Shown: positions 12,201 to 38,955, numbered from the stretch's first letter. The stretch is DNA of 64,000 nt from Fimbriosthenelais zetlandica (GCA_977030845.1 OZ365113.1:33852001-33916000), one strand, 5' to 3'. Numbers and translations: made by a program. The notes: generated from the letters alone by a model not told the origin.

Positions 12201-14648
12201 CCTTGACAACAAAGTAAACATAAACATTTAATGATTAATGAAGATTCATGCCTTACAACCCTTCCCCATGCCATTAGGCAGAGAGATAGGACTCTAATCA
12301 GCATGCGTAGGATAGATGATACTAAATCTGTGGAGCTAGATAATGCAATAACCGTAATTAATTGTCTTAACAAGTTATTAGCAAAGATATATAATACAAA
12401 AAAACTCGGATCATAGAAGAAATAGCGAGGGAGAGGAAAGAGACAAGGAGAGAAGCAAAGAAAGATCAGAGTCGACTATTGTGGGGAGGGTGAAAAAGAG
12501 GGAGATAGGGAGAGAGAGAGGGAGGGAGAGGGGGAGAGAGGGGAAGGGGAGGGGGAGGCTCAGAAGGGGTGGGTAGGGAGGGTACGGAGGGCGGGAGAGA
12601 GCTATGGAGAGAGGGAGAGAGGAGGCAGAGATGGAGAGAAGAGAGACAAAGAAAGAGACGCACACAAAGACAGAGAGAGAAAGCTTACCTTTAAATACTG
12701 GTTGAATTTTTTCAGAGCGTGGAGATGGCAGACTAGATGTCTGAGGTAGATGAGTAGATCATCTAGCTGTACGGCCTGGACAGAGCCTTTACCTTTAGCC
12801 ATGTACGTCTCACGGGCGATGGCCAGGCGCTTAGACCGGGCGATACAGTCATTGTACTCACTCATTATATGCCTGCTCAAAGCAATCAAATGAAATTAAA
12901 ATAATTAAGTTATAGTTTATCATTAGACAAATAAATATTATGCTTCCAAATTAAATTTTCCCAAGATATTCTACGTATTATAGAATATAGTTATTTTGCA
13001 TCTCTATAGTTCACAATTATCAGACAAGTAAGACAAATTAGATAAGGGTCAGATACGGTCGCTCGGAAATGGGGACCTTGCTTTATTCTTATGCTGTTCA
13101 AATAAGATCATTAGAAAGTCTAAATCATTTTTTTAACAAAATGCACAAATTCTCAGATACATTTAGATAATATAATTTGATAAAAGAGAAAACTAGAGTA
13201 CTGACGCTAGTCGTTTGTTGTAGTGGGGGTAGAGAGCCTCTATGGTGCTTGTATGTTCACAGAAACGCTTCCATCGTAACATGTGCATATGTTTACACTG
13301 AACCAACTGCTGGATACGATCCACAAAGTACTGAAACATAGATATAATATAAGAGATAAAATAAGAGATAACAAAATGATAAAGATTAAGCAGTGAAAGC
13401 AGTAAATATATTGTATCTATTCCCCTGGTTAAATAAGATGATGATTCATATCATTCACTGAAGAGAAATTGATGGATAGATGGATGAATGATAAATTGGA
13501 TGAATGGATAGATGGATAGATGAATGAATGATAAATTGTATGAATGGTTGGATGGATGGATGATAAATTGGATGAATGATACGTGCATTGAAGCATGGAT
13601 GAATGGATGGGCGAACAGATATGGATTGTATAGCTGAGTAAATAAATTGCAGCTATTCCCCTAGTTAAATAAAATGACACATCGAAACGGCAAAAATTTG
13701 TATCCACGGATAGATTAATGGATGGATTGATATTAAAATGGGTGAATAAGTGAATGGATTTAGAGTGAATGGCTGGATGATTGGGTGGATGGATTGGTAG
13801 ATAGATCGATGCATGGATTAGATGGATAGGCGGATAAAATAACGGATAGATGAGTAATTGGATGGATGAATGAAATGGATGAATAGACGTACCTGATGTA
13901 GGAGTAAAGGCAGGCTCTCTGACGTGTACTCAAAGTTAGTCGCGGCCTGGAGTTCCTCCTGCATGACCTCAGCCTGGAGGGTCAGTGGTTGAGCCTCGCA
14001 TACCTTACAGAAATCAACAGTAAATAGTCACATAGATCATCATCGTTACACGCTAGTCTAACCTTCTCTATGTTACATTTTGCGTATCTCGTACCCAATA
14101 TTTGAACCCATTTAGAGATGTTTTATAAATGGACTCACCTCCAGCACTCTCTTCAAACAGAGCTCCCTTTCCTTTTGAAAGTGATTGGCCTCTTTTGGCA
14201 AGGGCACTGAACTGAAAAAAAAAATAGACACACAAAATATTACTTATATATTTCAACTCTAATAATGCCACAAGTTTAATTAAGTCGATTTTCAAAAGGG
14301 CTTGGTGAAGGCATTAGTTGTGACCTGATAGTCCTAGTAATGCCATGTATTAAATATTAGTTGTTACCTGATAGTCCTAGTAATGTCATGTATTAGTTGT
14401 GACCTGATAGTCCTAGTAATGCCATGTATTAGTTGTGACCTGATAGTCCTAGTAATGCCATGTATTAGTTGTTACCTGATAGTCCTAGTAATGCCATGTA
14501 TTAGTTGTTACCTGATAGTCCTAGTAATGCCATGGATCACTTTGTTGTCCTCTATTTCAGCATGGAGCTCCTCCAGTTCTTTCCTCAGTTCAGCTTCTTG
14601 GCTGCGGACCTTGTCAGTGACCCACACTCGATCCGGCAGGTCCTCCAT
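297..14648 (-). CDS. CCDC162: Multi-exon CCDC162/C6orf183-like (DUF4549) protein; 3' part probably continues beyond the window start
   Basis: Phase-consistent GT-AG exons: 14657-14512 (ATG 14648; MEDLPDRVWVTDKVRSQEAELRKELEELHAEIEDNKVIHGITRTI), 14211-14139 (SSVPLPKEANHFQKERELCLKRVLE), 14003-13893 (VCEAQPLTLQAEVMQEELQAATNFEYTSESLPLLLHQ), 13330-13206 (YFVDRIQQLVQCKHMHMLRWKRFCEH), 12872-12689 (HIMSEYNDCIARSKRLAIARETYM...LIYLRHLVCHLH), 12201-12136, 10495-10285, 10033-9921, 9620-9495 and 8485-8291. Further coding blocks lie near 7880-8005, 6030-6128, 5325-5504 and 297-560. The MLRWKRFC, LPLLLHQ and LVCHLH motifs match my recollection of the DUF4549 N-terminus. Downstream exon edges are not all resolved. 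Confidence 0.75.
2290..2590. repeat. Degenerate intronic minisatellite (ATTGCCCTATACTACT-like unit)
   Basis: Repeated attgccctatac / attgccttatac / tactact words. Confidence 0.6.
10508..10624 (+). mobile_element. Tc1/mariner (pogo/Tigger-like) terminus with six 17-bp subterminal tandem repeats
   Basis: TA+CAGTGGAACCTC start, then about six copies of (c/t)CTCAATAAAGCGACCA at 10518-10623. No matching right end was found. Confidence 0.5.
12470..12680. repeat. Purine-rich (GA/GGA) low-complexity tract
   Basis: Nearly pure G/A on the plus strand, directly after exon 12872-12689. Confidence 0.8.
13455..13885. repeat. Degenerate (GGAT/GAAT)n microsatellite
   Basis: Visible gatggat/gaatgaat runs. 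Confidence 0.85.
14313..14534. repeat. 36-bp tandem repeat (6 copies) containing an exon end and splice donor
   Basis: Unit ATTAGTTGT(G/T)ACCTGATAGTCCTAGTAATGCCATGT. The rightmost copy overlaps the end of exon 14657-14512. Confidence 0.9.
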
Positions 14649-21581: not shown

Positions 21582-21739
21582 TCAAGTTTTGTCAGCACTT
21601 TTTTGGTTTTCCATCTCCGTCTCTTCGGTCACTTGGGAACGCTTCCACTTGTAGAATTTATACAAAACCAGATCGAAAAATTCAAATAATGAGATGACAC
21701 TTCCTCCGAGTAGCAGGCCCAGGTATCCCCCAACATCAC
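21582..21739 (-). CDS. DEG/ENaC last exon: TM2, GGS selectivity filter, short tail, TGA stop
   Basis: SDVGGYLGLLLGGSVISLFEFFDLVLYKFYKWKRSQVTEETEMENQKSADKT*. Confidence 0.92.
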
Positions 21740-24700
21740 CTAGAAAATAAAAATAACACTAAAATGGGGTTAAAAAAGGTTTCGTTATAAATCCCCTCCC
21801 AACAATGCATTTTACATAGAAGTTGTTAAAAAAATATAGGTTCCTTTTAATACTACAAATATGTTTTAATACTCACTTAAAAAGAGATCTATCGTGTATG
21901 TACGGATTTGTTTCACGTCTTGGTATTTTAGTTGAGCGAAATAGATGTCCACAGCAATAAAGTTCTTCCTGAATGAGGGGAAATATATTCAGAACTGTAT
22001 ACATTTATTTTAACTTCTAAGTTTTAAAAATTTGATTTGAAAATCCAAGGAAGAAAACTTACTTAAAGAATTCATCATCTAGACGGGTCTGTTGTATGTA
22101 TTTTTTATACTGATCTCCAGCTCTGGATAATAAACCTTTGATGTGGGCCCTTTTCCTCATCAAAGCTTGTGTGAGTTCAGATACAGCCTGATGGATTGGC
22201 TTATTGTGCCACACCACCAACTCCTCCAGAACCCTCGATGGGTTAGAAGCCAAAAACTGCTTCACTGATCCCATTGGAAACTTGTCCTCATCAAATATAA
22301 CAATTTCTGGTATCTCCACATTGGCCTTTGGGTAGTAAAATATCTTGAGTGATTTAAATGTGGAAGACTTATAATTGTTACCAAGGAAAAACGCGAGTTT
22401 GATTTCGACGTTTGCTAATGTTAAATATGTGTCCTCAGCTAGAGTTTGTAGCTGGATCAAGTGTTGCTTTATTGGATCAACAAAACTTGATGTAATGCTA
22501 GACACGAAGTAATCCACCTCCTCCAATGTTTTTGTTTGTTCTTCAAGACTGAGGAAATTGTTAAGGTCTTCCCATGTTAGGTACGCTGTGCGGAAGCTCT
22601 TTAAGTTTTTGGCAACTTTCTCTTGAAAATTCATCAGTGGTAGAGATGTATCGTAATAGTCCAATATGTTGTCAATGCTACCTTTTTTGTTAAAGGACAT
22701 TAACATTGTATTTACTCTTAGGATTGCATCTGCAAAGTTTTGCTTCCAAGATGCAATCGTCTCAAGTAAATTTGTATATTCCTCAGTGCATGGTAGGAAC
22801 TGTCTTGTTGTCATTTCCAAACGAATTATGTTGGTGACAAATTCTTGATTTGTTTTAAATTCCACACTGTCAAACTGTTGCTGGATTATGTCAAATCCAT
22901 GTCTAAGATTTAACAAACGTCCCTCACATTCATTACTAAACAGTTTCTGTGGTAGAAGCAGATGCATATCAGACCCTTCATCCACACCACTCATGATGGC
23001 AGCAATGGTATGGTTCAAATGAAAATATCCCTCTTTCAAAGCTAGAATTTGATTTCGAAGTAAAATTTCTTCCATCGTGCTGTTTGCACTTGGTTGTGGC
23101 ATAGTTGATAGTTGGTGCAATAGTCTGAGGCTAATGAGGAATCCCTGCAGCATTCCCTTTAGACTCCTGATGTTCAATCCATAAAAATAGTCAAAGGCAT
23201 TGTATAGATCTTCCACTTTCCATAATAACGTGTTGGATAAATCAGCAGAGAGTACATGATCAAGAAAACTTTGCATGACGAGGTGCATTCTCATGATTTG
23301 TGAACCTACTGGAGACCAAATCCTATTTCTTGTGAAAGCGAGGATGTCTTTGTATGCAACGTCCAGAGCTGAAAGTTTGTCCAAATCTTCCAGGAATGTG
23401 TCGGAATTGCTTCTGTAGTTGGTTTCTTGTATATCCAAGTATTTCGTTAGCAGGTGATCCAGGTTACCCTGGACAAGTTGACCAATGTTTAAGCTGGATA
23501 TGGCCCCATATGACAGCTGGCTTTCATATACCTTTCGGAAACAGGGTTCGATGCAGCCACAGTCAGAAAAAGATATGTCTGCAAAACCTGAAAGGATCCA
23601 AGACACTATTTTAGAACAACAAAAAGGTATGGTGGCATCTTTGCTCCTATCATATAGAAAAGTCATTGGTTGACTGAAGGCCGATATGACTTACCGGTCC
23701 TTTCAATAGTCAAGGCACAGTTGAGGTACTTGGACACATTACATATTGGCGGATTAACTGAAATGTCCAGAAAGATTGACTTTGACATCATTGAAATTAA
23801 AAATAATCATTATTAATGGAACATCACTGCAATACATTAAAATGTATTGGAGGACGAGGCAAATAGATCCAACACTCACCAGCACTGCAATACATTGTCT
23901 GCTTATACAGCAGGTCTTATTTGAAAGAAAAAATGTTTTAAATAATTTAAATTTCATTGATCTTTTGAACGCTTACATTCGTTGAAGCCAGGCATGTAAC
24001 TGTCCCTACAGCCACACATTTGAAGCATAGCCTGGGTCTCACACTCTCTGACACAGGAAGAAAACGTATAGGTATTGGTATAGTTGAGTGTTGCTGTACC
24101 ACAGGATCCCCAGGGTGGTCCTAGACTCTCCGTCTGTTAAAATATGGAGGTTAAAGAACTAAAATAAACTTACATTCCCTGTATGTATGCTACAAAAAGG
24201 CAGGAATAACATGGGTAGGTCAGTCAATGCATTCAATAAACACGAGTTTATAATTGCATTACTCCAGAAAAGAAATAAGATAATTTCTCATAATTGCACT
24301 GTTAACTTAAAAAAATAACCAGAAAACTATGTATAGAGACAGATCAGAGATTGTGCCATGGTTTGTATTCACCTGGGTCAGCTTAACTGCCACCAGGGCG
24401 TGACTTCCTGGACCGACAGAAAAGCCCAGGTCTCGGACAAAAGGCACCTCCTGCTGATCGTGCAGGAATATCTGCAAGAAAAAGTCTTTGCGTATTAGAT
24501 GAACATTAAATATGGATATTCAATATAATGTATGGACTCCATTCCCAGTATATTCACAAACGACATATTTATGACACAACAGCAGCGGATCCAGTATTTT
24601 GGAAAGTGGTGCACTGTCCAGAACTGAAGGCAATTACTTTAAGGTCTTACTTTAATTATAGGTAGCCAAAATGACCAAAGGACCTGCAGGGATATTTTAC

Positions 24701-27700
24701 CTTCATCCCAGCGTCTCCATGAGGCCCTTTCATGTACTCATATTGTTCTATGTTGAGTAACAGTCTCAAGCCAGATGAAGCTCCTGTGGAGAAAAGACGC
24801 GAATAAGACCAAGAACTATATATGTACGTGTATTGGACATATATTGTCCATAGATACATGAGTACAAAGTATTTGTGAATAGTTTATATGTTCTTACCAG
24901 TTCTAGCTGTGAGCAAGGTGTTATTAAATGTGCCTATGTTGAAGGTGTGACAGAGGCCATAATCTGTGATCTGAGTTGTAAAGTTCTCCCCAGAGCAGGG
25001 ACTTCCTCCCCACGAACATCTGCAAAGTTAGACTTCCTTATATTTTTGTATTATATGATTGTGTATTGTGTGAGAATTAACATTGTATATGGACATCACC
25101 TATACCAACTTTATTACACTGTTGATCTGAAAACCTGCTTCTTAATTTCTAGATGTATCAAATCCCATTTAAACTTATACATGTACTTGTAAAAGAAAAT
25201 GTATCGGGCAAATAATTAGATGAAGACTAACCCATGTATTAGGTCCTCTACTTGATGTCCAAGCTCATAGAACATGCTTGTCAAGTCATCAGCTGAAAGG
25301 AGGGTCAATGATTCATTTAATGCGGCAAATAGCATCACAATATTGACATACAGATATTAAACCACAGATAGTTGAATATGGTGGCGGATCCAGAGGCCCT
25401 TTTCGACCCCCAAGTGTCCTTCACGGACTACAAATGCCCTTTCTGACTCCTAAGTGACCTTTCTGACCCCCAAATAGGTTATTCAAAGGCAGATAGTGGA
25501 CATTAATTGCAGAAAGAAATCTAGGCCCTAGAGTTCCTGTTTAGTATAGTGCATCTGGGGTCCAAAAAGCGATGCTGCCACCCCCTACCACTGCCCTCTG
25601 CTATTGTCTCCGTATTCTGGGTGCAATGGGATGTAAACTGCCCATTTCCCATAGCACCCTTCCTCTGGAAAATCCTGGATCCACCCCTGAAGTGGTACAA
25701 ACGGTCATATATTGTTGTTGGTATATACCATCCCTGTATGTATCCTCCAGTGTTCTGTCCTCATCTTCAAAAATAGTGTCAACGGCTCCAGGATCTCCTG
25801 GTGCACCTGGAACCCCATGATGTCCTCTCATGTCATAATCTGAAATATTATGTAATAAGAATACAGAATTATGTTACAGAGGTCCAAGGGTTTACTCGAA
25901 ATAACCCCCAGAAAAATAACCAATTCTTTCAAGGAAAAGATGAAAATATCAAATGACGCTTATGTAGACTAAAGCCTGGAGCACACTAATCCAATTCTCT
26001 ATCCGGCTCCATCCGATAGCTGTCGGAAACTATATTTCTATTCACACAAATTTGAAAGACCTTTACACCTAGGTGAGGGTGACGATTGACAAAATTTCAA
26101 TCGTTGGATGCCATTAGAAATTTTGGTATGAATGGTGACTTATTGGAGAATCGGATTAGGGTGTTCCAAGCTTTAGTTTATAAAGTATTTTCAGGCCTCA
26201 CCACCACGATTACGATCACCCACTGGACCTGGACAATAAGGGGGTAGTTCATCATCTCCAAGCCAACAATCACGCTTCCCATCACACAACAAGAATCTAT
26301 CAAGACATTTGTAAAACTTTCCAGAACACACATAGCCTGGACAGGCACCTGTAAATAATCAATAAGATTAATTTGGAACGTTGATTGTTTAAAGACGGCC
26401 AAGTACAGTGCTCCTCCCCTAAATCGACCGGACGGTCGGATGTGGAGGAGCGATGCTTTTGCTGCTGTAGCATATATAAGCATTGATGAGGCCATGGGCT
26501 AAACTGGTTCTCTAATAATTTGGATTCGATGATAATTAAGAAAATGAAGAAATAACTCATACAACGCAAATCAACCCACCTGGAACTTCACACTGTCCTG
26601 GTTCTGCTTTGATCGCTGATATAGTTAATCCTGAATCTTCATATAATCCAGCACTCACCAAAAGTCTGTAACTACCAGGGGACACCTGAAACTTCACCAA
26701 AGCTTCACCGACTTCTCCAGAATACACGTTCTCAGCCCATAACAGTAATGAGCTTTCTCCCTCGTTTACATCGGTATTATTAGGCTCAAGGCCTGAAGCC
26801 AATTCTCTGTTTGTCCATCTCTGTTCGTCTATTCCATATGAAGCATTATAAACATTTAGTTTTATGGGATCTCTACCACTAGTCCTGATCTTGGTGAGGT
26901 TTAAAGTCACACAGTGATAGAGTTCTGAGGTCAAGGTCGGGGAAAGTACCAATGCTTCTCCTCTACGTATTGGGCCTCCCAAAGGCAGGTGTGTTCTCAA
27001 CCCTAGGATTAATAATAAAGGGAAAATAACCTCGGGATTATTCACAATTGATATCGAAGTATATTTGCATGCAGTACATACATGGCCTTTTTATTTATCG
27101 AATACATGAGAAGTGAGAAATGTTCTTTTTCTTACCTCGATCATGAAGAAGCCACGAGGCAAATGATCTAGAAACATCCAAGTAATTGCACACTTCCCCA
27201 CTATAAAACTCACAGTCAAGGCCACCATCTTTGACTGAAATTTGAAAAACTGCAGGTAAATATTTGAAACAATTTGGAAAGAGCATCTAATTGCACTGTT
27301 ATGTATACTTACATTTTTCCACGCACGTTTCATGGCTGATATTCACATTGTTCAACTTGATCCTGTAATCGTCGACCTCTCCTGTACAGTTGAAGACAAA
27401 CTGCAGCCGTGTCAGATTATTTAGAGACAAGAGACTCACAAAAGTCGAACGCCAATAGTTAGACCCAGCTCTGAGTTGCTCAGCATCTCCCGAAACAATG
27501 TCGAGGAGCGTTTGTGAATCCGGATGCAACTGATAAACAGAGAGACTACAAATGCCAGAGGAGATGGCCATGTTGTGGTCTATCTGGAGGCAGCTGGGTC
27601 CAGCCAGCATCAGCCAGGCAGATGACAGGATCTTCCTTTGTAATTCAGAGACAGAGGATGCTGTGATGGAGACAAAACTGCCTGGAAAAATCATATTAAG

Positions 27701-30700
27701 TACAGTTAAGAGATGGAGGTGTAAAATAATTCCGTTCAATTTCCTTTGGATAGCCTGCAATTATTATTATGGATTTAATGACAGAATCTCAAGCCTACCG
27801 TCTCTTTCCTGTGTGAATTGCCAGCCTTCCATATCAGGATTAGAATAATCAATATAACCACATATAAAGCTCTCACTGAAATCACAGTCAAATCTCCTCT
27901 CTAGAAGTCAAAATGCAAAGCAATAATATATTAAGTGCTAAATCACCATCTATGACCCATATTGCAGGACTAATTTACCAGATTACTAAATTAATTGACT
28001 TTCTTAGGATCACAATTAGGTTCTGGTAAACTATAGCTAATTAAGTTTCTAAGGAAATTCACCTCTTAAGGTCATAAGGACAAACTTTAGGAAGGTCAAT
28101 TAGATGTTTTTCTGATTCCTCTTCGAATGACACAAGGTTTTATATTGGATTACATGTTAAAGTTAGAAATTGGAAAGTATATTATTAGCATTTTAGATTT
28201 CTAGTCATACTTGGATCACACACTGCACCATCCTCATCTGAGAAGTCCTGACAGTGGACCACCCCGTCACATAATGACGTCATGGAGACGCACTCACTTC
28301 CGCTGTCACAGAGTACCTCGTCTGGCCAACACAATCCTACATTACAAACAATTTATGTGTCATTAAACATCAAAAGTTCACAATTTACTCCACTTTTTTT
28401 GTAAACTATAATCAGCATGATGACCCCCATATTTGAGATAATGGCAGCAAGTGACGTTTGCTATGCCTTGGTCAATTCCGACCAATCAGAGGTCCCCAAA
28501 CTTTTCCTGCATCATGGCACATATTGGTTCATTCTGATCATTCTGATCTAACCATAGAAATATATATAGTTCTATGGACTAACGAAAGAGCTACCTTGAA
28601 AAGTAACTTTCCCTTTGGCCTCGCAGAACTTACGTGTATCTTGGTTTTCACAGTCATGTCTCAGCTTCACGTCATCAATGGCCATGTCACTCAGGTATGG
28701 TTCACCAAGCACCGCCTCAAACACAATCCAGTAAGCCACTACTTCATTCACAGTCATATTCCTGCTGTAGTACCTCCATATATCACTCAGATCACTAGTA
28801 CCACTCACTCTGACCAATCTCTGACGGAGATATTTCCCAGTGTATTTATACACAATGATTTCCCCCATAGACTCCGGGAAGAAGGTGTCCTTAGCTGTGT
28901 AAGCATGGAATTCTAGGCATTCTGGAATATCGTTTGATGAAATGTGCATTGGGGTAGATATACTGATGCGTTCTCTTTCAGTTCGTGTGATGGTTCCAGA
29001 ATCTAAATAGAGGTAATGACCTGAAAGGGAAAAAAATAATTATATTCAAGAGATTAGAATCAAGGTAAAAGGGTGGAAAGTATTTTAAGGTTTTACCTTT
29101 GGCTGTTTGTGTGGTATGATCCAATGTTAAACGGCCATTTCTCATCCGGCCCTGATGTCTCTGCCACTGTGTCTTTTTCCTACTTCCTCCTTCATACCCA
29201 CAGATTTTTGGTGATTCAAAGTTGCAATCGACTTCTTTGACTTGAAATTCAAGTGATAATATTTCAATTAGAAGGCTGAGGCATTCTGAGCGGGCAGTTT
29301 CAGTCGGTCAAATATGCCTGAACCTTTCGACCTCCACTATTAAAATTGCATGAGATGTATGAGAAAACTTACTACAAGTATTGATTTCATCCGAGAGGTC
29401 AAAGCAGTCATATGTCCCATCACAAATAGCTATCAGAGGCACACATTGCCCACTCTTGCATCTAAACTGGTCATCCCTGCATTCTGTTAAAGAAAAACAT
29501 ATTATTACCTGTACCCACTTCTATAGGAAGATTTCTTACTTCTCAGATTGACAAGTATGCACATTCCCGACAAGGATCTATATATTCTTGAATTGCATCT
29601 CAGAAGTCTAGACTGATTTTTCAGAATTGAATAGACCAGAACTACCTAATGCAGTATAGGCCTATAATAAAAACACAAATTATTAAATATTTTACCACAA
29701 TATGGAATGGAACAACCAGAAGTTTCAGGGAACACTGAGTTCCCGCGCGTGAAGCACCAGGGCCCATTGGGATTGTCATCTGGGTTTCGGCAGTATGAGG
29801 CAGCGCCATCTACCGACCCTTCCAGGAAGTCACTGTCTGCTGTAAACGACCTGATGCTGGGGTCTGACCAAGGCAGGCAGGGGAAACCATCAGACGCCAG
29901 GGAAATATTACCAAGATATTCAGTACCAAGAACGGTCATTCTGCATTCCCGATAACCCAAAGCTGAAAATATTTAAAAACAATTATAAATGTCGTGTGCT
30001 TTATTCTCACGATGCATATAGAACCATCTGTTATGGGTCCTCAAAATTCTGCTAAGAATCGCTTGTTAAAATTCAGGGTGTTTGATTTATTATGAAATAC
30101 TCGTCTATTACGTCCATTTTCCTACTGCTTCATTTTGGTTAATGTGCTAACAGGTTGCGATCAGGTCATCTACTGCCACCATGTAGCAAAACCTGGAACT
30201 ATGGTGGATTTGACCCGGAAGTGGAATAACAATAACAACGCATGCGTGCGTGAGTCCAAGATTCCAAGATGGCCGACATGGCAGCCAAAAGGGGCATATT
30301 TAACATTTCAACAGTTGAAAAAGCAGGAATTACTTCACTTTGAGGAATTGTCAAGATCCCCAAAACAAAGAGAAGCTGTATGAGTACATGGCCGTGTGTT
30401 GTGAGGGGTTGAGCCTCCATGTCATTCGTTTTTTGGTCTACTAACATCATGAAAACCTGGGCGCTCCAGTTTCATCACATGGTCATGGCTGCTGCAAACG
30501 GTGAAGGTAAGTTCTTATTCTAGTAATATTAAAACTATTAAAGGGGGTATAGTCAAAACTATAAACTTACTCAATGTTTCACATCTGTCTATCTTTACAT
30601 CATCCAATGCTACATGGCCTTTACTGTTAAGGTTGTTTATCCCAGGCTTAACATGGACTTGGTAGAGTCCTGTGCCCAGGTAGAGGAACTGCCTGTTCCA

Positions 30701-33700
30701 CAGTTGTCCCTTTGTTACGGTCAGGCGGTGTGTTGTGATTATATTCTCACTACTGTCAACCAGGTTGACACTGAGAGAGTACCTAGTGAAACAGAGAGAG
30801 TACTTTGGTGTCGAATTTTCACCAAAAAAATCAGAAATATGATTAATAAATCTTAGATGTATGATAATGACGGAATTTTCAAGCTGAAACAAATTCACAT
30901 TTACAAAATGATTTACTACTGTCAATTGGCTATAATGCTTCCAGTACCTGCTGCTTTCCAATGTTGCATTAGAAAAGCTATAAGAAATATCCATACAGAG
31001 CGGCTGCTGAGCTTGTAGGTAAGGAGTGAAGAGGTACGGAGGTGAGAGGGGATTGGCTAATGCTGTATCATCCAAATACAAATAGGAACCTATAAGTAAA
31101 AGTGAGATACAGTTCAGATCATTACAGCAATTCTATTTATTATTAAAGGCATAGATTAAACGAATTATTTCAAATCAGGTTGATCGGATCTTGCGGTTCC
31201 AAGTGGTGCACATATGCATTTAATAAAATGAATAGACAATAAGTTGGGCCTAGACTAACCTATACGTGTATAGATATAGCAAGAAGATAAGCTCACGAGC
31301 AACATATAGCCATAATTTTATGATAGATCAAGATAGATAATAGAAAGACACAGTACATGACATGCTGGAAGGCACTTCTCCGAAATATTCAAAAGCCCTT
31401 TAGCCGTTTTATGGAGTTGTAACATACGAGGGAGGTCCTTGCAATAGTTGATCCATCAATATTATAAAGGAATACTTGAGCTATATAGGATTATAACTTG
31501 AGAGCGTATAGATCTTGGCTGCCTTTGAAGAAAGAAAGGAATTTTTAAGCTTATTTATAGATCTATGATATAATTTCAGGGCAAAAATATCTCATTGTCA
31601 AAGAAAACGCTCCCAGATCCAGTAAAGTAACTGTGAATAAAGGCCTTGTATAGAGATGATCCAACCTGAATCCAGATGGCAGAGGTGTAATGTTGGGTCG
31701 GGTCCTGCTCATGACATATATAACAGAGGATGCAAACAACATATTATCTTAATCCAGAGAAATATCGCCACTTATTCCATGGTTAATGTGAGGGTGGGCA
31801 GTATGGAGCCAATACTGCACGCTCCCAAAACAAGCCATACTAATTTCTACTAGAGACTGGCAGCATTCGTGATAGGCCCCTTAAATTTTCCCTCTAACTA
31901 CTGTAGTTTTAGCTTTAATAACTGACTCTAATAACAAGTAAACTGAAAGAATGTGTTACATTACCGAATTGTCTATTAAAAATTCAAGTGAAAAAACTAG
32001 TAAAAGCTAATTTCCATGTATGTAAATCCACAAAATGCTCTTTCAGTATTTGTCAATAGGATGGCAACATGCTGCCTTTGACAACATGGGGATATATTCA
32101 TAGGATAGTTTCCATTAGTATATGATATAAAACACTTACTATGAGACTTTTGATAAGTTTCAATATTTACCATAGATCTTAGTATGGTCACGATTTGGAC
32201 CTCTCTTGAATGTTTCTGGGGTTCCCCTCCTCCATACATCCCCGGAATACTGCTTGTCCTCATATAAAGGACATGGCCGACCTCCTTCAAAGTCACATAC
32301 AATACTCACTGCAACAAAATTCATAGATTATCTCTAACCCATCAATGGTTATAATGAAGTCCTATCTTGCCAGGTGCCATAACCGTCTGTGAGGACATTA
32401 ACTAAGCTAGGGATAAAACATGTATTCTCGATCAGGGATGCCAAAGAACACTTGTTATGAATGAATGAATGAATGAATGAATGAAGTTATTTGCCTATAT
32501 AGGCAGTTCTGACCTTAGATATATAGTTAATTAAACTACAAGTTATAGCTGGTTGATGTATCAGTTAATAGAAATCAATTCCTAAACATGACATCACTGA
32601 ATTCTTAAAGGGAGGCCAAACACTTTGTATAAAGTTATTTTCCTTAGATAGTTGATTTCACCACAAATAATGTCACAGGATGTCACATGTTGGTTAGCCA
32701 ATCAGAGTGAGGAAGGGGCTGGGCACTGTCATTTTTCTACACAAGGTGCGCCTTGTAGTAAAGGAGCCAGTGTTGTTCTTCGGGGCCTTAAAAGTGCAAT
32801 GAAATATGAGATCAGAACTCACCTGGACATCGTTTCCTCACATAGACATCCGATTCTCCATGAAAGACTTTCCTAATAAGTGCATTTTCAGGGATCAAAG
32901 TGAAGATATCACAATATTTCATGTAATTGTCGTACATAAAAGAGTTACAAGTGTTCCCATGATACTTCACACAGAGCATTCTACACAGCTTTTTGGTGAT
33001 TTTCCGATACCGTGTCGTCCTTCTTCCAAACATAACAATTCCTCGTTGTATATCAAAATCATCTTCTTGGCAACCTATATCAGGATACAAAGAACAAGAA
33101 GATATGATAATTCATGATATACATTCAGTATAGATTAAAGTGAAATCAATGGGGAGTGGATTTGAAGCTTTTAATTGCAGAGTCCAGAAAAAGTTCTTAA
33201 AAAGCATAAAAATTAAATCAGTTTCTCTGGACTATGGTTGTGAACACCCATCCACCACCTCTTGCGTTACCTAATTTATGGAGGGCCCTATATCTTACTT
33301 TATACTCCATCTATGCCTGGAATATATCAAGAGGCCTTTTATCTTAATATCCGACCAGAGGACTCTTATCCATGGCAAGGCAAAAAACATACCATGGATA
33401 TTTACCCTGGGTGGACACGCCCAGACCAGCAAACACGCCTCTTAAGCAGTGATCATAGAAGCGGGGCAATATTGAAGATTGCAATAATGGTCAGTGGTCC
33501 AGGGTCATCAAAACAGGCAGTGAGAGGTTGGGCAAGAAAGTGGCAAAAAACAATTTGGGCAAATAAAATGATATCTGAAATGAGGTTCCTGACTTCATAA
33601 CCTCCAGATCCACCATTTCAGATCAATTGGACATGGAATTCCTTGATTAAATGAGGATAATAGTCTACAGGTTAATAATTATTATTATAGTATTAATGCG

Positions 33701-35641: not shown

Positions 35642-36913
35642 CTAAGAAGTGTAAAGTGTCTTATTCCTGCAAGCATTCCAGTAGGTGGTGAAGTATTGTG
35701 GTCGTACCCCATGAATTGCCATCCAGTTTTTGTCATAAGGACATGTAATGTTAGCGTTCACGGTGGCCATTGATGGGTGCGGCACCAAATGAAATCCCCC
35801 TAAATTCATTACAGTCGCTTTCTTCGTACCTTTATACATCGCTTGCATCACTAGTGCGAAATAAATATCCTCTAGAACAAATATAGGAACATTTGGTGAC
35901 GTGTTCATCATTTGAAGTGTCAAATTGTAGGATGTTATAAAGTTTGTACCTACACAATAAGGAGGGAGTGATTTATTCGGGTATTCATTCCAGGTTAAGT
36001 AAAATTTGGACTTTACGTAGCGGACTGGTTTTGACCATACGTAACATTTTCCTACGATAGCTGACTGTAATTTATCTCTGTCTCTGTTGACTAGTTCAAT
36101 GATATTCGGTACATTGAGAAAATTATCATCAGCTGTTCTCACCACAAAGCGCGCCATGTTGCAATGTTTCTTAAACCAATGATATCCACCAAGGACTTTG
36201 ATGGAGAGATTGTAGTAAGAATCGATATAGTCATCCTGCTGTATGTCACCAAATTCTCTAGATTCAGCATCCACTATTTTCTGCTGGTCTATGGGCCAGC
36301 CCGCCCCAAACAGAAAGATATGCCTTGAAATATTACCAGTTATTTTCTTACTAAATGAGGCCCAAGTTTGACGAATGGCCTTTCTCTCAGCAACAGCACT
36401 AGGCACTGTAGTTATCAGCAGTATAATATCCACTTTTGAATGCCCATCACAGACTTTGGGGACAATTAAATTTTTATATTGGTATTTGAAACAATTGTTA
36501 CATTCTTTTTGTCTCACATGTCTTGGAAACGTCCTTTGCCACAAATACTGATGACCTCCGAGAAAACGTATTTCAGTGGGCAAGTAACCTTTAGAATTTG
36601 TATCCCGTTTCCATGGCATAAATCCATCCTTAGGTAGATCTTGCTTTCTACTTCCTCCGTTTTCTGACCCGTTTCCTATGCTTCCTAATTTGGTTGCTGT
36701 TTTTTTCATAACTACATAGTATCTGTTAATATGTTCTCTCATAAATCCGACAAAGTCCTTTCCACTTTTTTCCAGATTTTCAAACGTGGATAGGATAATT
36801 GGTTTAGAAGAAGTTTGTGTCGTTCTGATAGTGTGTACCTGTGTTTTAAGTATAATCACAAAAGGGGAATAGAAACATAGACAAGCTAGTAACAGACGGT
36901 AGGTACATGCCAT
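35642..36913 (-). CDS. GT31-family beta-1,3-galactosyltransferase-like type II membrane protein, single coding exon
   Basis: Likely start ATG 36913 (AATATGG). N-terminal hydrophobic anchor, then LLITTVP...ERKAIRQTW, HIFLFG, ESREFGDIQQDDYIDSYYNLSIK, RTADDNFLN, YPNKSLPPYC.G, EDIYF and IHG motifs. The exact subfamily cannot be assigned. Confidence 0.88.
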   Translation of the reverse strand: MACTYRLLLACLCFYSPFVIILKTQVHTIRTTQTSSKPIILSTFENLEKSGKDFVGFMREHINRYYVVMKKTATKLGSIGNGSENGGSRKQDLPKDGFMPWKRDTNSKGYLPTEIRFLGGHQYLWQRTFPRHVRQKECNNCFKYQYKNLIVPKVCDGHSKVDIILLITTVPSAVAERKAIRQTWASFSKKITGNISRHIFLFGAGWPIDQQKIVDAESREFGDIQQDDYIDSYYNLSIKVLGGYHWFKKHCNMARFVVRTADDNFLNVPNIIELVNRDRDKLQSAIVGKCYVWSKPVRYVKSKFYLTWNEYPNKSLPPYCVGTNFITSYNLTLQMMNTSPNVPIFVLEDIYFALVMQAMYKGTKKATVMNLGGFHLVPHPSMATVNANITCPYDKNWMAIHGVRPQYFTTYWNACRNKTLYTS

Positions 36914-38955
36914 ATTTCCATACACATACTCCTGTTATAGGCCTAATCATTATGTGTAGGTCTATACTTAGGCCTATAACCGCTTACGTATTGGTCCCAT
37001 TCAGCTCTGGATACTAGGCTTGAGTTTAGCTTGACAGGCTAGACAGTCTCCTCAACTTTGGTCAAAGAGTATTTGTGCCCTATATAATATACTCCTTGTT
37101 TTGGTGTAGAAATTTTGAGTAAAAATGAAATTGTTCAGTAGAGCAACTGGGTGACTGGAGCCGGGGAGATTATGAAACTTGGTCAGGGACCTTTTCCAAG
37201 ATGCGGAGGTATATGACTGCTAGTGCATAAAACTACGAGAAGTGGGCCAAAATATAATTAGAGCAGAAACAAGCTTCTCAACAAATCAGGGAATGGCCAG
37301 GCCTATATGACTACAGGGTGACAGCTCTTGTATTCTCATGGGATTTAACAGTTCCCTCCGTGACACAAGTATAGGCATATAACCCATATAAGTCTACAAT
37401 GTATACGATAATGACTATCATGGCAGACATGCTACATACATAATATGCCACTAATGTTGGAAAGAAGGGTACATTTATAGGGGACCTTTTAGCTTGCTAT
37501 TAGGGTATAGGAAAACATTTGAATCTATTCAGCGCGTCATCCCTCTTGACTGAAATAATAAACGGGAATCGAAATCATCTGTATGTTTCTCTATATTGCT
37601 TCAGTACTTCACCAGTTGGCCAATTCATATAAAAGGCTTCTGCAGGTTTACCCGCGGCTCTATCATTTCACCTCTGTTCTTCAACTCATTAGGGCTATTC
37701 AAATTTTTAGACACTTTTTGTTCAAAAACTTTGAACTTGAAATAGCCACCTCCACTAACCAATAAGCGCCCACAATTTTAAAAGAACCTGGATCATCTGC
37801 CCTTTTTCTACCCCTGTAACGCCTGAAAATGGCGTATTAATGAATATTACAGCAATAATAAATCGTACAAGGTACAACACAATTTAATGCTTGACATAAA
37901 AGTGTGACTAGAACTATATAATTCTGCTGACATCTACCAGACAATGATCAACCTAGAATATCTTAGAATCTGGGTCAAACAATGCGCATCTAGCACGAAA
38001 TTTCTAATTGTCATGAGGAGAGAAGCTTTACGTTCAGTGATAGTGATAGTGCAACTTTAATAATTTTATGCCAGGCATGCGTGGGAGTGTGGGACATATA
38101 TTTGACATGATTCTTTGTGACTCTATAAGCTACTTCTATATAGAATCACCGGGTAATTTTATTACCATTGTCGTGATGTTAGCCTAAATATACCCTATGC
38201 TAATATATTGATCTTTACTTAATGGTTTTTTTTTTAATCAGCAACTACATGGTAAAGCTCTATATTTTATCAACTGGAGGTACTCATGGGTTATCATGGG
38301 TATAAATGGAGCATATAAAACAAACCAAGATAGATGTTCATGTACTTAGAAAAAGATTATCTTTAAATCAAATTTTTACCCAGAAATTTCTCGGAAGAGG
38401 TGATAAACACATGAGCTGTTGCTTGGTGTTGAGTCTTTGGTTATAAATAATGAGTATATTTATGTATAGTGCGCATGGAACAGGCGGAGTTAAAGAGCTG
38501 GAGATGAGATGTAATGAGTCGAAGGAACTGATAGGGAGGTACTGCAGTGATACATGTATACATAGTTATATATAATGGCTCTATTTTAATTTAACATATT
38601 TAGAACCGTACTAGAAATTTCTGAGGGGGCCTCTTGGGGCTGCATGTCTCCTGCAAGGAACAGCCATCGATACTTATCTTTGTTCCAAATCTCGCAATGT
38701 TTAAACATAAGTTGTACATAAAAAGGGCTAGAAGTGTTAATATATGTATTGAAAATGCATTATGCTTTCCCTTCTAATCGTATTCTTTACATGTACATTA
38801 TATTGTGTGTATATATCAAACTAGATATCAAATTTCAAATTTATAGACCTTGATCTGAAGCCTACTGTAGGCTGAAAAGTAGGTTGAAACAACCGAAAGT
38901 GGTATGGTGAAACAAAAGGTCTATAATAATAAAATGAAGAAGAACGTCAACTAAC

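What the first reader, a model, noticed from the sequence alone, without database searches (positions are those of the whole stretch)
22063..23578. ~460-aa Cys-poor helical insertion at the knuckle position, encoded by one large exon
In canonical subunits only ~25-30 residues (alpha6/alpha7 knuckle) separate the C.C..PC...Y..LS motif from NFxxLDIYF. Here ~460 residues rich in L/I/E/K/Q with amphipathic periodicity intervene, and only two cysteines lie in this stretch. The knuckle is near the three-fold axis at the channel apex, so three copies could form a helical bundle or stalk. The intronless state contrasts with the finely interrupted rest of the gene and suggests a separate origin.
Basis: partly seen in the sequence, partly recalled or inferred. 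Interest (0 to 1): 0.72.

Follow-up and report, generated by a model that had tools for sequence, protein, structure and literature searches.

The report
Helical rod domain in channel knuckle
One large exon of an invertebrate DEG/ENaC sodium-channel gene encodes a real, conserved, roughly 455-residue all-helical extracellular domain placed between the two short "knuckle" helices. At least 20 sister genes in this genome and several other animal assemblies carry the same domain, and I found no paper that describes it.

Summary
On the minus strand, one exon (23587 or 23578 to 22063) stays open for 508 codons. It starts with the canonical C.C..PC…Y..LS motif. It splices in frame (AA|GTAAGT … CATTCAG|G) into the exon encoding KNFIAVDIYF and then into the TM2 exon.

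About 455 residues lie between the equivalents of knuckle helices α6 and α7. Only two of them are cysteines.

The insert is not a one-off. At least 20 paralogous loci in this genome carry the homologous domain at the same site, as do 29 protein clusters from other assemblies. Each paralogue tested pairs with a protein from another assembly, so the family is older than those species splits.

AlphaFold2 gives confident all-α models for two members that share only 18% identity (pLDDT 87.5 and 88.5). No Pfam, PDB or Swiss-Prot relative turned up beyond generic four-helix bundles. The two cysteines are nearly invariant and sit in register across a helical hairpin, which fits a disulfide.

My best reading is a self-folding rod mounted on the static knuckle scaffold that acts as a tether or partner-binding arm. 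That function is inferred, not shown. No RNA data could be had. The scan had already noted this kind of domain on other pieces of this genome (s1-214053).

The parts
23695..23757 (-). Small exon (63 nt) encoding the end of the thumb (..PPICNVSKYLNCALTIERT). Acceptor TTTCAG|, donor ACCG|GTAAGT, leaves in phase 1.
   Evidence: The same exon is present in the ortholog contig L011. It matches the contiguous sequence of P0025 from another species.
22063..23587 (-). The large exon (1525 nt, or 1516 nt if the alternative in-frame acceptor at 23578 is used). It encodes the beta10 motif, alpha6, the helical insert and an alpha7-like end.
   Evidence: The acceptor is conserved in L011. The phase-2 donor is conserved in L011 and L012.
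23493..23561 (-). Canonical DEG/ENaC segment C.C..PC....Y..LSY..IS (residues 10-32 of the exon product), the end of the thumb and palm strand beta10.
   Evidence: Conserved in 29-32 of the aligned homologues. It aligns to ASIC2 residues 357-390 through P0025. ASC Pfam hits 25 of 35 family members through this segment.
22089..23456 (-). The insert proper (residues about 45-500), an all-alpha domain of long helices. Model helices: H32-60, 62-91, 97-118, 121-162, 171-200, 219-239, 248-297, 311-333, 348-405, 450-501.
   Evidence: AlphaFold2 pLDDT 87.5, pTM 0.79. A member with 18% identity gives the same helix order, with 87.5% agreement in secondary structure.
22788..22928 (-). Hairpin carrying the two nearly invariant cysteines, C221 (22928-22926) and C267 (22790-22788). 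A likely disulfide staple.
   Evidence: Both are Cys in every one of the 32-33 sequences that have a residue there. The register rule 221+267=488 against 239+248=487 holds, and likewise 529 against 528 in the second model.
22242..22373 (-). Conserved non-helical segment (residues 406-449) with a short beta-bridge. The family consensus here reads W..P..N.E.P......F, and the query has F417, P420 and F445. It is the best-conserved part of the C-terminal half.
22065..22088 (-). The alpha7-like end (..RLDDEFF). The family consensus ends I[DG]..F[VI][KR], comparable with ASIC ..QYIGEN before beta11.
   Evidence: The comparison with the ASIC motif is from my own knowledge of the cASIC1 sequence.
21877..21968 (-). 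Next exon (92 nt), encoding KNFIAVDIYFAQLKYQDVKQIRTYTIDLFL, palm strands beta11-beta12.
   Evidence: Pfam ASC positions 401-433. In-frame splice. The same exon lies 35-770 nt downstream of the big ORF in 7 of 9 related loci.
21582..21739 (-). Last coding exon: TM2 (GGYLGLLLGGSVISLFEFFD), a short C-terminus and the stop codon.
   Evidence: Pfam ASC positions 430-454. Open frame to the stop.

Best explanation
The exon is a genuine coding exon of a DEG/ENaC channel gene. It keeps both short knuckle helices and places about 455 extra residues in the loop between them. Those residues fold on their own into an elongated all-helical domain. Its longest helices have 50-58 residues, so the rod is roughly 80-90 A long, about the height of the rest of the ectodomain. 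A central four-helix bundle and one conserved disulfide-type cysteine pair are part of it. The domain defines an old, large subfamily of these channels. All of this is shown or directly computed. What follows is inferred. [quoted passage not shown] The rod is therefore most likely a rigid arm on a fixed platform that reaches out of the channel to bind matrix or partner proteins. It could act as a built-in extracellular tether (force-from-filament) or as a docking or clustering arm. It is less likely to be a moving gating element. I give the structural part about 0.85 and the tether or docking function about 0.35.
For: Coding and in-frame. Position between ASC model positions 329 and 401. Homology to ASIC2 runs up to the start of alpha6. 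Conservation: 29 clusters among 1.84 billion representatives, all starting with the C.C..PC motif and ending I[DG]..F[VI][KR]; about 25 loci in this genome, at least 20 of them with a long open frame after the motif. Each of five tested paralogues pairs with a protein from another assembly at 100% bootstrap. Purifying selection: dN/dS 0.31, from 13 synonymous and 15 non-synonymous changes, binomial P = 0.0026, in two copies from another species. Fold: two confident AlphaFold2 models, 87.5% secondary-structure agreement at 18% identity. Nearly invariant C221 and C267 in hairpin register. Static knuckle and upper-palm scaffold: PMC3536724. Knuckle-finger collar at the top of ENaC: PMC6197857. 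Knuckle N-glycans proposed as matrix tethers for shear sensing: PMC6955349.
Against: There is no transcript evidence for this gene: no sequencing run could be listed. The alignments behind the models are shallow (35-36 sequences) and I could not inspect the coordinates, so the packing of the helices and the direction in which the rod points are inferred. No binding partner, ligand or expression site is known. Between orthologues the insert keeps only 40% identity, against 76% for the flanking channel exons. That fits a spacer or a fast-evolving interface equally well. In DEG/ENaC channels tethering has so far been proposed for glycans and matrix proteins, not for a built-in domain.
Confidence: 0.6

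Rival explanations
1. Trimeric stalk. The three inserts of a channel trimer combine along the three-fold axis into one shared coiled-coil or helical bundle that stabilises or extends the trimer.
For: The knuckles lie at the top of the trimer, close to one another (PMC6197857). The insert is amphipathic and 82% helical, with very long helices.
Against: A single chain is predicted to bury its own helices in a confident compact fold (pTM 0.79 in two members). The conserved cysteine pair is within one chain. The only self-association run gave no verdict because that program did not fold the chain, so there is no positive evidence.
Confidence: 0.15
2. Built-in ligand sensor. The central four-helix bundle (residues about 120-285) binds a small molecule or peptide, as the periplasmic four-helix-bundle domains of bacterial chemoreceptors do, and passes the signal to the finger and palm to gate the channel.
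For: Among the best structural matches for residues 105-291 are Tar, Tsr, PcaY, NarQ and other sensor domains at Z 10-11.6, and the best Foldseek PDB hit is the McpZ sensing domain. DEG/ENaC channels are often ligand-gated.
Against: De novo designed bundles score as high or higher (Z up to 12.2), and the tool's own note puts helical noise at about Z 13. There is no sequence match to 4HB_MCP or any other Pfam family. The knuckle is the static part of the ectodomain. Conservation is lowest across much of this bundle.
Confidence: 0.15
3. Not part of the mature protein. The long open frame is removed by splicing, or it belongs to an intronic element or a decaying pseudo-exon.
For: No RNA data were available for this genome.
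Against: The frame starts with an indispensable channel motif and leaves in the phase the next exon needs. It is conserved over its whole length in paralogues and other species, with invariant residues in its middle and end. dN/dS is 0.31. The fold is confident throughout. There are no transposon or other Pfam domains.
Confidence: 0.03

Closest known systems
Knuckle domain (helices alpha6 and alpha7) of ASIC1 and ENaC
   Same: Same site in the fold, between palm strands beta10 and beta11. The flanking motifs are kept: C.C..PC..Y..LS and the start of alpha6 before it, and an alpha7-like ..EFFKKN followed by F.AVDIYF after it.
   Different: The canonical knuckle is two short helices of some 25-30 residues. 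Here about 455 residues of long helices sit between them.
Other lineage-specific ectodomain additions in DEG/ENaC: the ENaC GRIP domain, the finger insertions of FaNaC, and the extracellular regulatory and cysteine-rich extensions of nematode degenerins such as MEC-4
   Same: Extra modules grafted onto the conserved hand-shaped ectodomain that give a subfamily its own regulation. GRIP is described in PMC6197857. The FaNaC and MEC-4 cases are from my own knowledge.
   Different: Those additions lie in or next to the finger, are smaller, and are beta-rich or cysteine-rich. This one lies in the knuckle, is all-helical and is nearly free of cysteine.
Bacterial chemoreceptor and sensor-kinase four-helix-bundle ligand-binding domains (Tar, Tsr, NarQ, McpZ)
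   Same: The shape of the central bundle (residues about 105-291) superposes at Z 10-11.6.
   Different: There is no sequence relationship. Designed bundles match equally well. This is a resemblance of a common arrangement, not membership.
Unreviewed database proteins K1PHY3 ('Amiloride-sensitive cation channel 4-B', 678 aa) and R7T5W4 (654 aa) in AlphaFold DB
   Same: Predicted structures match the whole insert (query residues 37-507 and 1-507), probability 1.00, E 6e-5 and 6e-4. Gene models containing this domain inside channel proteins therefore already sit in public databases.
   Different: Only 11-12% identity, and the models are fragments. By my memory of the accession series they come from an oyster and from the annelid Capitella; the tool did not show the organism. 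No paper mentions them.
Earlier notes of this scan on the same genome (s1-214053, s1-188465)
   Same: They report a roughly 500-residue helical rod at the knuckle of other DEG/ENaC genes of this genome. My profile search finds three neighbouring loci on contig C1 at 44.16-44.20 Mb that may be the genes meant.
   Different: That is different DNA. This gene is the member that also carries a large finger cassette.

Membership tests
DEG/ENaC (Pfam ASC, PF00858) | ASC-domain sequence on both sides of the insert, on the same strand and in order | tested here: met
   Exon hits at model positions 21-79, 154-191, 230-267 and 267-329 upstream, and 401-433 and 430-454 downstream.
DEG/ENaC (Pfam ASC, PF00858) | N-terminal HG motif, TM1, and the post-TM1 FP.vT.C motif | tested here: met
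   Open frames at 34422-34285 (..TTFHGIRYV..) and 34146-33877 (hydrophobic TM1..LPFPAVTLCNQN..). Pfam ASC 21-79, E 1e-12.
DEG/ENaC (Pfam ASC, PF00858) | TM2 with the G-x-S selectivity-filter triplet and a conserved acidic residue | tested here: met
   The spliced frame reads GGYLGLLLGGSVISLFEFFD. Pfam ASC 430-454.
DEG/ENaC (Pfam ASC, PF00858) | Cysteine-rich thumb ending in C.C..PC | tested here: met
   CGCRDSYMPG....ICNVSKYLNC.. and ..DCGCIEPC. The orthologous contiguous segment aligns to ASIC2 at E 1e-34.
DEG/ENaC (Pfam ASC, PF00858) | Assembly as a trimeric, amiloride-sensitive cation channel | not testable with these tools
   Needs expression and electrophysiology.
Four-helix-bundle chemoreceptor sensing domain (4HB_MCP, PF12729 and relatives) | Sequence match to the family profile | tested here: not met
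   No such hit in any of the 35 family members at E up to 0.1.
Four-helix-bundle chemoreceptor sensing domain (4HB_MCP, PF12729 and relatives) | Structural match standing clearly above unrelated helical bundles | tested here: not met
   Z 10-11.6 for the sensors against 12.2 for de novo designed bundles, which is under the tool's helical noise mark of about 13.
Trimeric coiled-coil stalk | Predicted or observed contact between copies of the insert | tested here: inconclusive
   A run with two copies gave no verdict because the chains were not folded (pLDDT 38).
Prominin and tweety-type extracellular helical bundles | Fold match | tested here: not met
   Foldseek E 7e-3 to 1e-1, TM at most 0.14.

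The most novel reading that the evidence does not exclude
The knuckle rod is a channel-integral extracellular tether or gating spring. In that case this subfamily would be DEG/ENaC mechanosensors, or contact sensors, that carry their own link to the matrix or to a neighbouring cell instead of relying on separate tether proteins. A paralogue that adds about 500 residues of mucin-like sequence inside the rod points the same way.
Probability: 0.2. Interest if true: 0.8.

Novelty: new variant of a known kind. Interest (0 to 1): 0.55.

Why it matters
DEG/ENaC channels are gated by protons, peptides, proteases and force. How force or external structures reach the channel is a long-standing open question, with the matrix proteins of C. 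elegans and the knuckle glycans of ENaC as the known leads. Here a whole subfamily, perhaps a third of the DEG/ENaC loci I could count in this genome, has a rigid helical domain the size of the channel's own ectodomain. It is mounted exactly on the static top of the channel and has been kept through many gene duplications and species splits. That gives a concrete, deletable module with which to test built-in tethering or partner docking. It also adds a domain family with no Pfam entry or solved relative. It is a warning for phylogenies and annotation too: gene finders and alignments that trim long inserts will miss or truncate these channels.

Tried and rejected
RNA evidence: two look-ups for sequencing runs listed none (one further call failed as busy). 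This means none was listed, not that none exists.

Self-association: complex prediction with two copies of residues 36-508 gave no verdict. The program did not use the alignment and did not fold the chains (pLDDT 38). It is no evidence either way.

With P0012 it returned three proteins. Neither search found a full-length annotated relative.

ESM Atlas by features gave no usable hit, and by shape only generic bundles. Pfam gave nothing on the exon product except a sub-threshold Kdo match. A PDB profile search returned only designed helical proteins, MCP cytoplasmic bundles, TBK1 and apolipoprotein at E of 1e-4 or weaker, which I read as composition.

Internal duplication: hhalign between five segments and between the two halves of the family alignment gave probabilities of 7% or less, so there is no sign of a repeat origin.

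Transposon or nested-gene origin is rejected, because the frame begins with a channel motif and has no other domain.

Literature: seven full-text searches and seven papers opened. None mentions a large knuckle insertion. Subscription-only papers are not covered.

Coordinates of the models were not available to scripts, so I could not measure the Cys-Cys distance or the length of the rod directly. Both are inferred from helix lengths and register.

Full report
WHAT IS THERE. The window is contig C19, 33852001-33916000, of a 447-Mb animal assembly. On the minus strand lies a DEG/ENaC gene cut into many small exons. Pfam ASC hits fall at 34056-33817 (TM1), 25042-24698 and 24625-23969. Single exons match ASC model positions 21-79, 154-191, 230-267 and 267-329.

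Downstream of these, one frame is open from 23690 to 22062. Its likely exon starts at the acceptor TTTCAG|GT (23587) or at TTGCAG|AC (23578), 9 nt further on; both are in frame. It ends at AA|GTAAGT (22063).

I joined the preceding 63-nt exon (23757-23695), this exon, the 92-nt exon 21968-21877 and the last exon 21739-21582. That gives a single open frame. It reads ..RLDDEFF-K-KNFIAVDIYFAQLKYQ.. and then the TM2 motif GGYLGLLLGGS, up to a stop. The two downstream exons match ASC positions 401-433 and 430-454. A run of 508 open codons at 39% GC has a chance probability of about 2e-15.

WHERE IN THE FOLD. The exon product begins with ..DCGCIEPCFRKVYESQLSYGAISS. A homologue from another species (P0025) has the channel core and the start of the insert in one open frame. 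Through it, homology to ASIC2 (6l6p, E 1e-34) runs up to ..[31 protein letters not shown], which is through palm strand beta10 into the first knuckle helix alpha6.

The family's invariant ending, I[DG]..F[VI][KR] followed by KNF...D[IV][YF]F, corresponds to ..QYIGEN-ILVLDIFF of ASIC1, that is alpha7 and beta11. That comparison rests on my own knowledge of the cASIC1 sequence. Both knuckle helices are thus kept, and about 455 residues (about 45-500 of the exon product, window 23456-22089) stand in the loop between them.

IT IS A FAMILY TRAIT. An exhaustive phmmer search of 1.84 billion representatives found 29 proteins. All are unnamed ORF calls of about 400-575 residues from Logan or ENA assemblies. 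Those that are complete at the ends start with the C.C..PC..Y.P.LSY..LS motif and end with the I[DG]..F[VI][KR] motif. So the domain was found only inside DEG/ENaC genes.

In the window's own genome, the protein found six further loci. The family profile found about 25 loci, at least 20 of them with a long open frame after the motif. From the TM1-exon and full-length hits I count at least 60 DEG/ENaC loci, so roughly a third carry the domain. Both numbers are lower bounds. In 7 of 9 related loci the KNF...DIYF exon lies 35-770 nt downstream of the big frame.

In a maximum-likelihood tree of 30 members, each of five tested paralogues of this genome pairs with a protein from another assembly: window with P0001, L002 with P0007, L003 with P0017, L006 with P0019, L009 with P0013, all at 100% bootstrap. 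The seven own-genome rows need seven changes of label. The paralogues therefore arose before those species split.

The orthologous contig L011 has the same exon layout, the same phase-2 donor and the first acceptor only. Between the two orthologues the flanking channel exons are 76% identical (123 of 161 positions), but the insert only 40%.

Two copies in one other assembly (L014, L015) differ by 13 synonymous and 15 non-synonymous changes. That gives dN/dS 0.31, with P = 0.0026 for an excess of synonymous change.

FOLD. With the 35-sequence alignment A1, AlphaFold2 gives mean pLDDT 87.5 and pTM 0.79. Confidence is low only in residues 1-34, the beta10 segment torn out of its sheet, and in one loop. 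82% of residues 45-500 are helical, in ten helices of more than 20 residues, the longest with 50-58.

A member of another subclade (P0012, 18% identical) gives pLDDT 88.5 and pTM 0.79 with the same order of elements. Secondary structure agrees at 87.5% of 489 aligned positions. Helices of 50-58 residues imply a rod of some 75-90 A, which is an inference from 1.5 A per residue.

The only two cysteines, C221 and C267, are Cys in every sequence that has a residue there. In both models they lie at matching heights of two successive antiparallel helices: 221+267=488 against 239+248=487, and 236+293=529 against 262+266=528. That is what a disulfide staple in an extracellular domain would look like.

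Other nearly invariant positions are D116, P213, Y271 and Y388, plus a conserved non-helical stretch at 406-449 whose consensus reads W..P..N.E.P...F. The hydrophobic moment peaks at 100 degrees, z = 3.5.

NO KNOWN RELATIVE. Pfam finds only ASC, through the short N-terminal motif, in 25 of 35 members. A PDB profile search returns designed helical proteins and similar noise. Foldseek against the PDB has no match at E of 1e-3 or better; the best is the McpZ sensing domain at E 0.02.

The aligner that does not rely on Foldseek matches residues about 105-291 to four-helix bundles at Z up to 12.2. De novo designed bundles score above the Tar, Tsr and NarQ sensors, and all stay under the tool's own noise mark for helical proteins. 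Swiss-Prot models (prominin and tweety at E about 1e-2, TM at most 0.14) and the ESM Atlas add nothing.

The AlphaFold DB clusters do give two whole-domain matches with probability 1.00. One is K1PHY3, named 'Amiloride-sensitive cation channel 4-B' (E 6e-5, TM 0.47). The other is R7T5W4 (E 6e-4). By my memory of the accession series these are an oyster protein and a Capitella protein, which would place the subfamily in molluscs and annelids. The tool did not show the organisms, so this is a lead, not a result. There is no sign of internal repeats.

ORIGIN. The evidence does not support this.
- The exon is not a clean cassette. It also encodes beta10 and alpha6, it enters in phase 1 and it leaves in phase 2.
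- Several paralogues encode the same domain in 2 to 5 exons: contig C25 at 5.905 Mb has five pieces, C11 at 12.28 Mb has two, and C13 at 2.52 Mb has at least three.
- The gene on L012 has an intron of about 107 nt inside the domain, while its channel core is less interrupted than here.
- No free-standing donor protein was found.

The origin stays open.

HOW IT MOST LIKELY WORKS. Shown: this is a self-folding, conserved, extracellular helical rod on the knuckle. Established knowledge adds three points. [quoted passage not shown] N-glycans in the palm and knuckle of alpha-ENaC were proposed as tethers to the extracellular matrix for shear sensing (PMC6955349).

My inference is that a rigid arm on the non-moving top of the channel is best placed to hold on to something outside, whether matrix, a partner protein or another cell. 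It would act as a tether or docking arm rather than as a moving gate. Three observations fit this reading:
- The insert diverges faster than the core.
- The same gene carries MAM, LDLa and kringle-like modules in its finger (note s1-223617).
- A paralogue interrupts the rod with about 500 residues of Ser/Tyr/Pro/Thr-rich, mucin-like sequence.

LIMITS. No RNA run could be listed for this genome. The self-association test gave no verdict. Model coordinates could not be inspected. The taxon is not known to me. In seven searches and seven opened papers I found no description of a large knuckle insertion, but subscription journals are not covered.

The scan itself had already noted the same kind of domain on other pieces of this genome (s1-214053, s1-188465). 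That agrees with my profile search and does not change the scores.

VERDICT. This is a new variant of a known kind, namely a DEG/ENaC subfamily defined by an undescribed helical ectodomain. Interest 0.55.

Noticed in passing
L016:5443-8682 (G000 contig C1, 62005443-62008682): A paralogue has a single open frame of 1079 codons in which the helical knuckle domain is itself interrupted by about 500 residues of Ser/Tyr/Pro-rich repeats (SSYPSYSSSS..), a Pro-rich run and a Thr-rich mucin-like stretch. It has no Pfam match.
   Followed up: partly
window 23578-23587: Two in-frame acceptor sites lie 9 nt apart (TTTCAG|GTTTTGCAG|AC). They would add or drop three residues (G-F-A) just before the C.C..PC motif. 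The ortholog L011 has only the upstream one.
   Followed up: partly
window 26200-33110, minus strand: Between the TM1/beta1 exons and the next ASC exon, on the same strand, lie open frames that look like MAM, LDL-receptor class A, kringle and PAN/apple modules. This is the 'finger cassette' of notes s1-223617 and s1-223605. I saw them only in the frame listing and did not test them.
   Followed up: no
window 35648-36934, minus strand: An intronless 429-codon frame directly upstream of the channel gene matches Pfam Galactosyl_T (PF01762, E 3e-29). It is a beta-1,3-galactosyltransferase-type neighbour.
   Followed up: partly
window 12400-13930: A stretch with strong G-over-C skew (0.26-0.33) gives long low-complexity frames on the minus strand, rich in Ser, Pro, Leu, Ile and His (IHPSIHP.., LSLSL..). 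It is probably a simple-repeat tract.
   Followed up: no
L012:1-3100 (Logan SRR23372229 contig): In another, AT-rich species the homologous gene has the finger-to-thumb core in one exon, an intron of about 107 nt inside the knuckle domain and an intron of about 55 nt after it. Intron positions in this subfamily are therefore fluid. Upstream lies a Pro/Ser/Gly-rich low-complexity frame.
   Followed up: partly
G000 contig C13 (e.g. 15273982-15275517, 21918991-21920538, 14710837-14712372): Many canonical DEG/ENaC genes in this genome are intronless and lack the insert, with ASC positions 1-455 in about 1.5 kb. They are clustered on contig C13, in contrast with the finely split, insert-bearing genes.
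   Followed up: no
L014 and L015 (ENA ERZ25767047, two contigs): One other assembly holds two 97%-identical copies of an insert exon on different multi-megabase contigs. They are haplotypes or a recent duplication, and I used them for dN/dS.
   Followed up: partly
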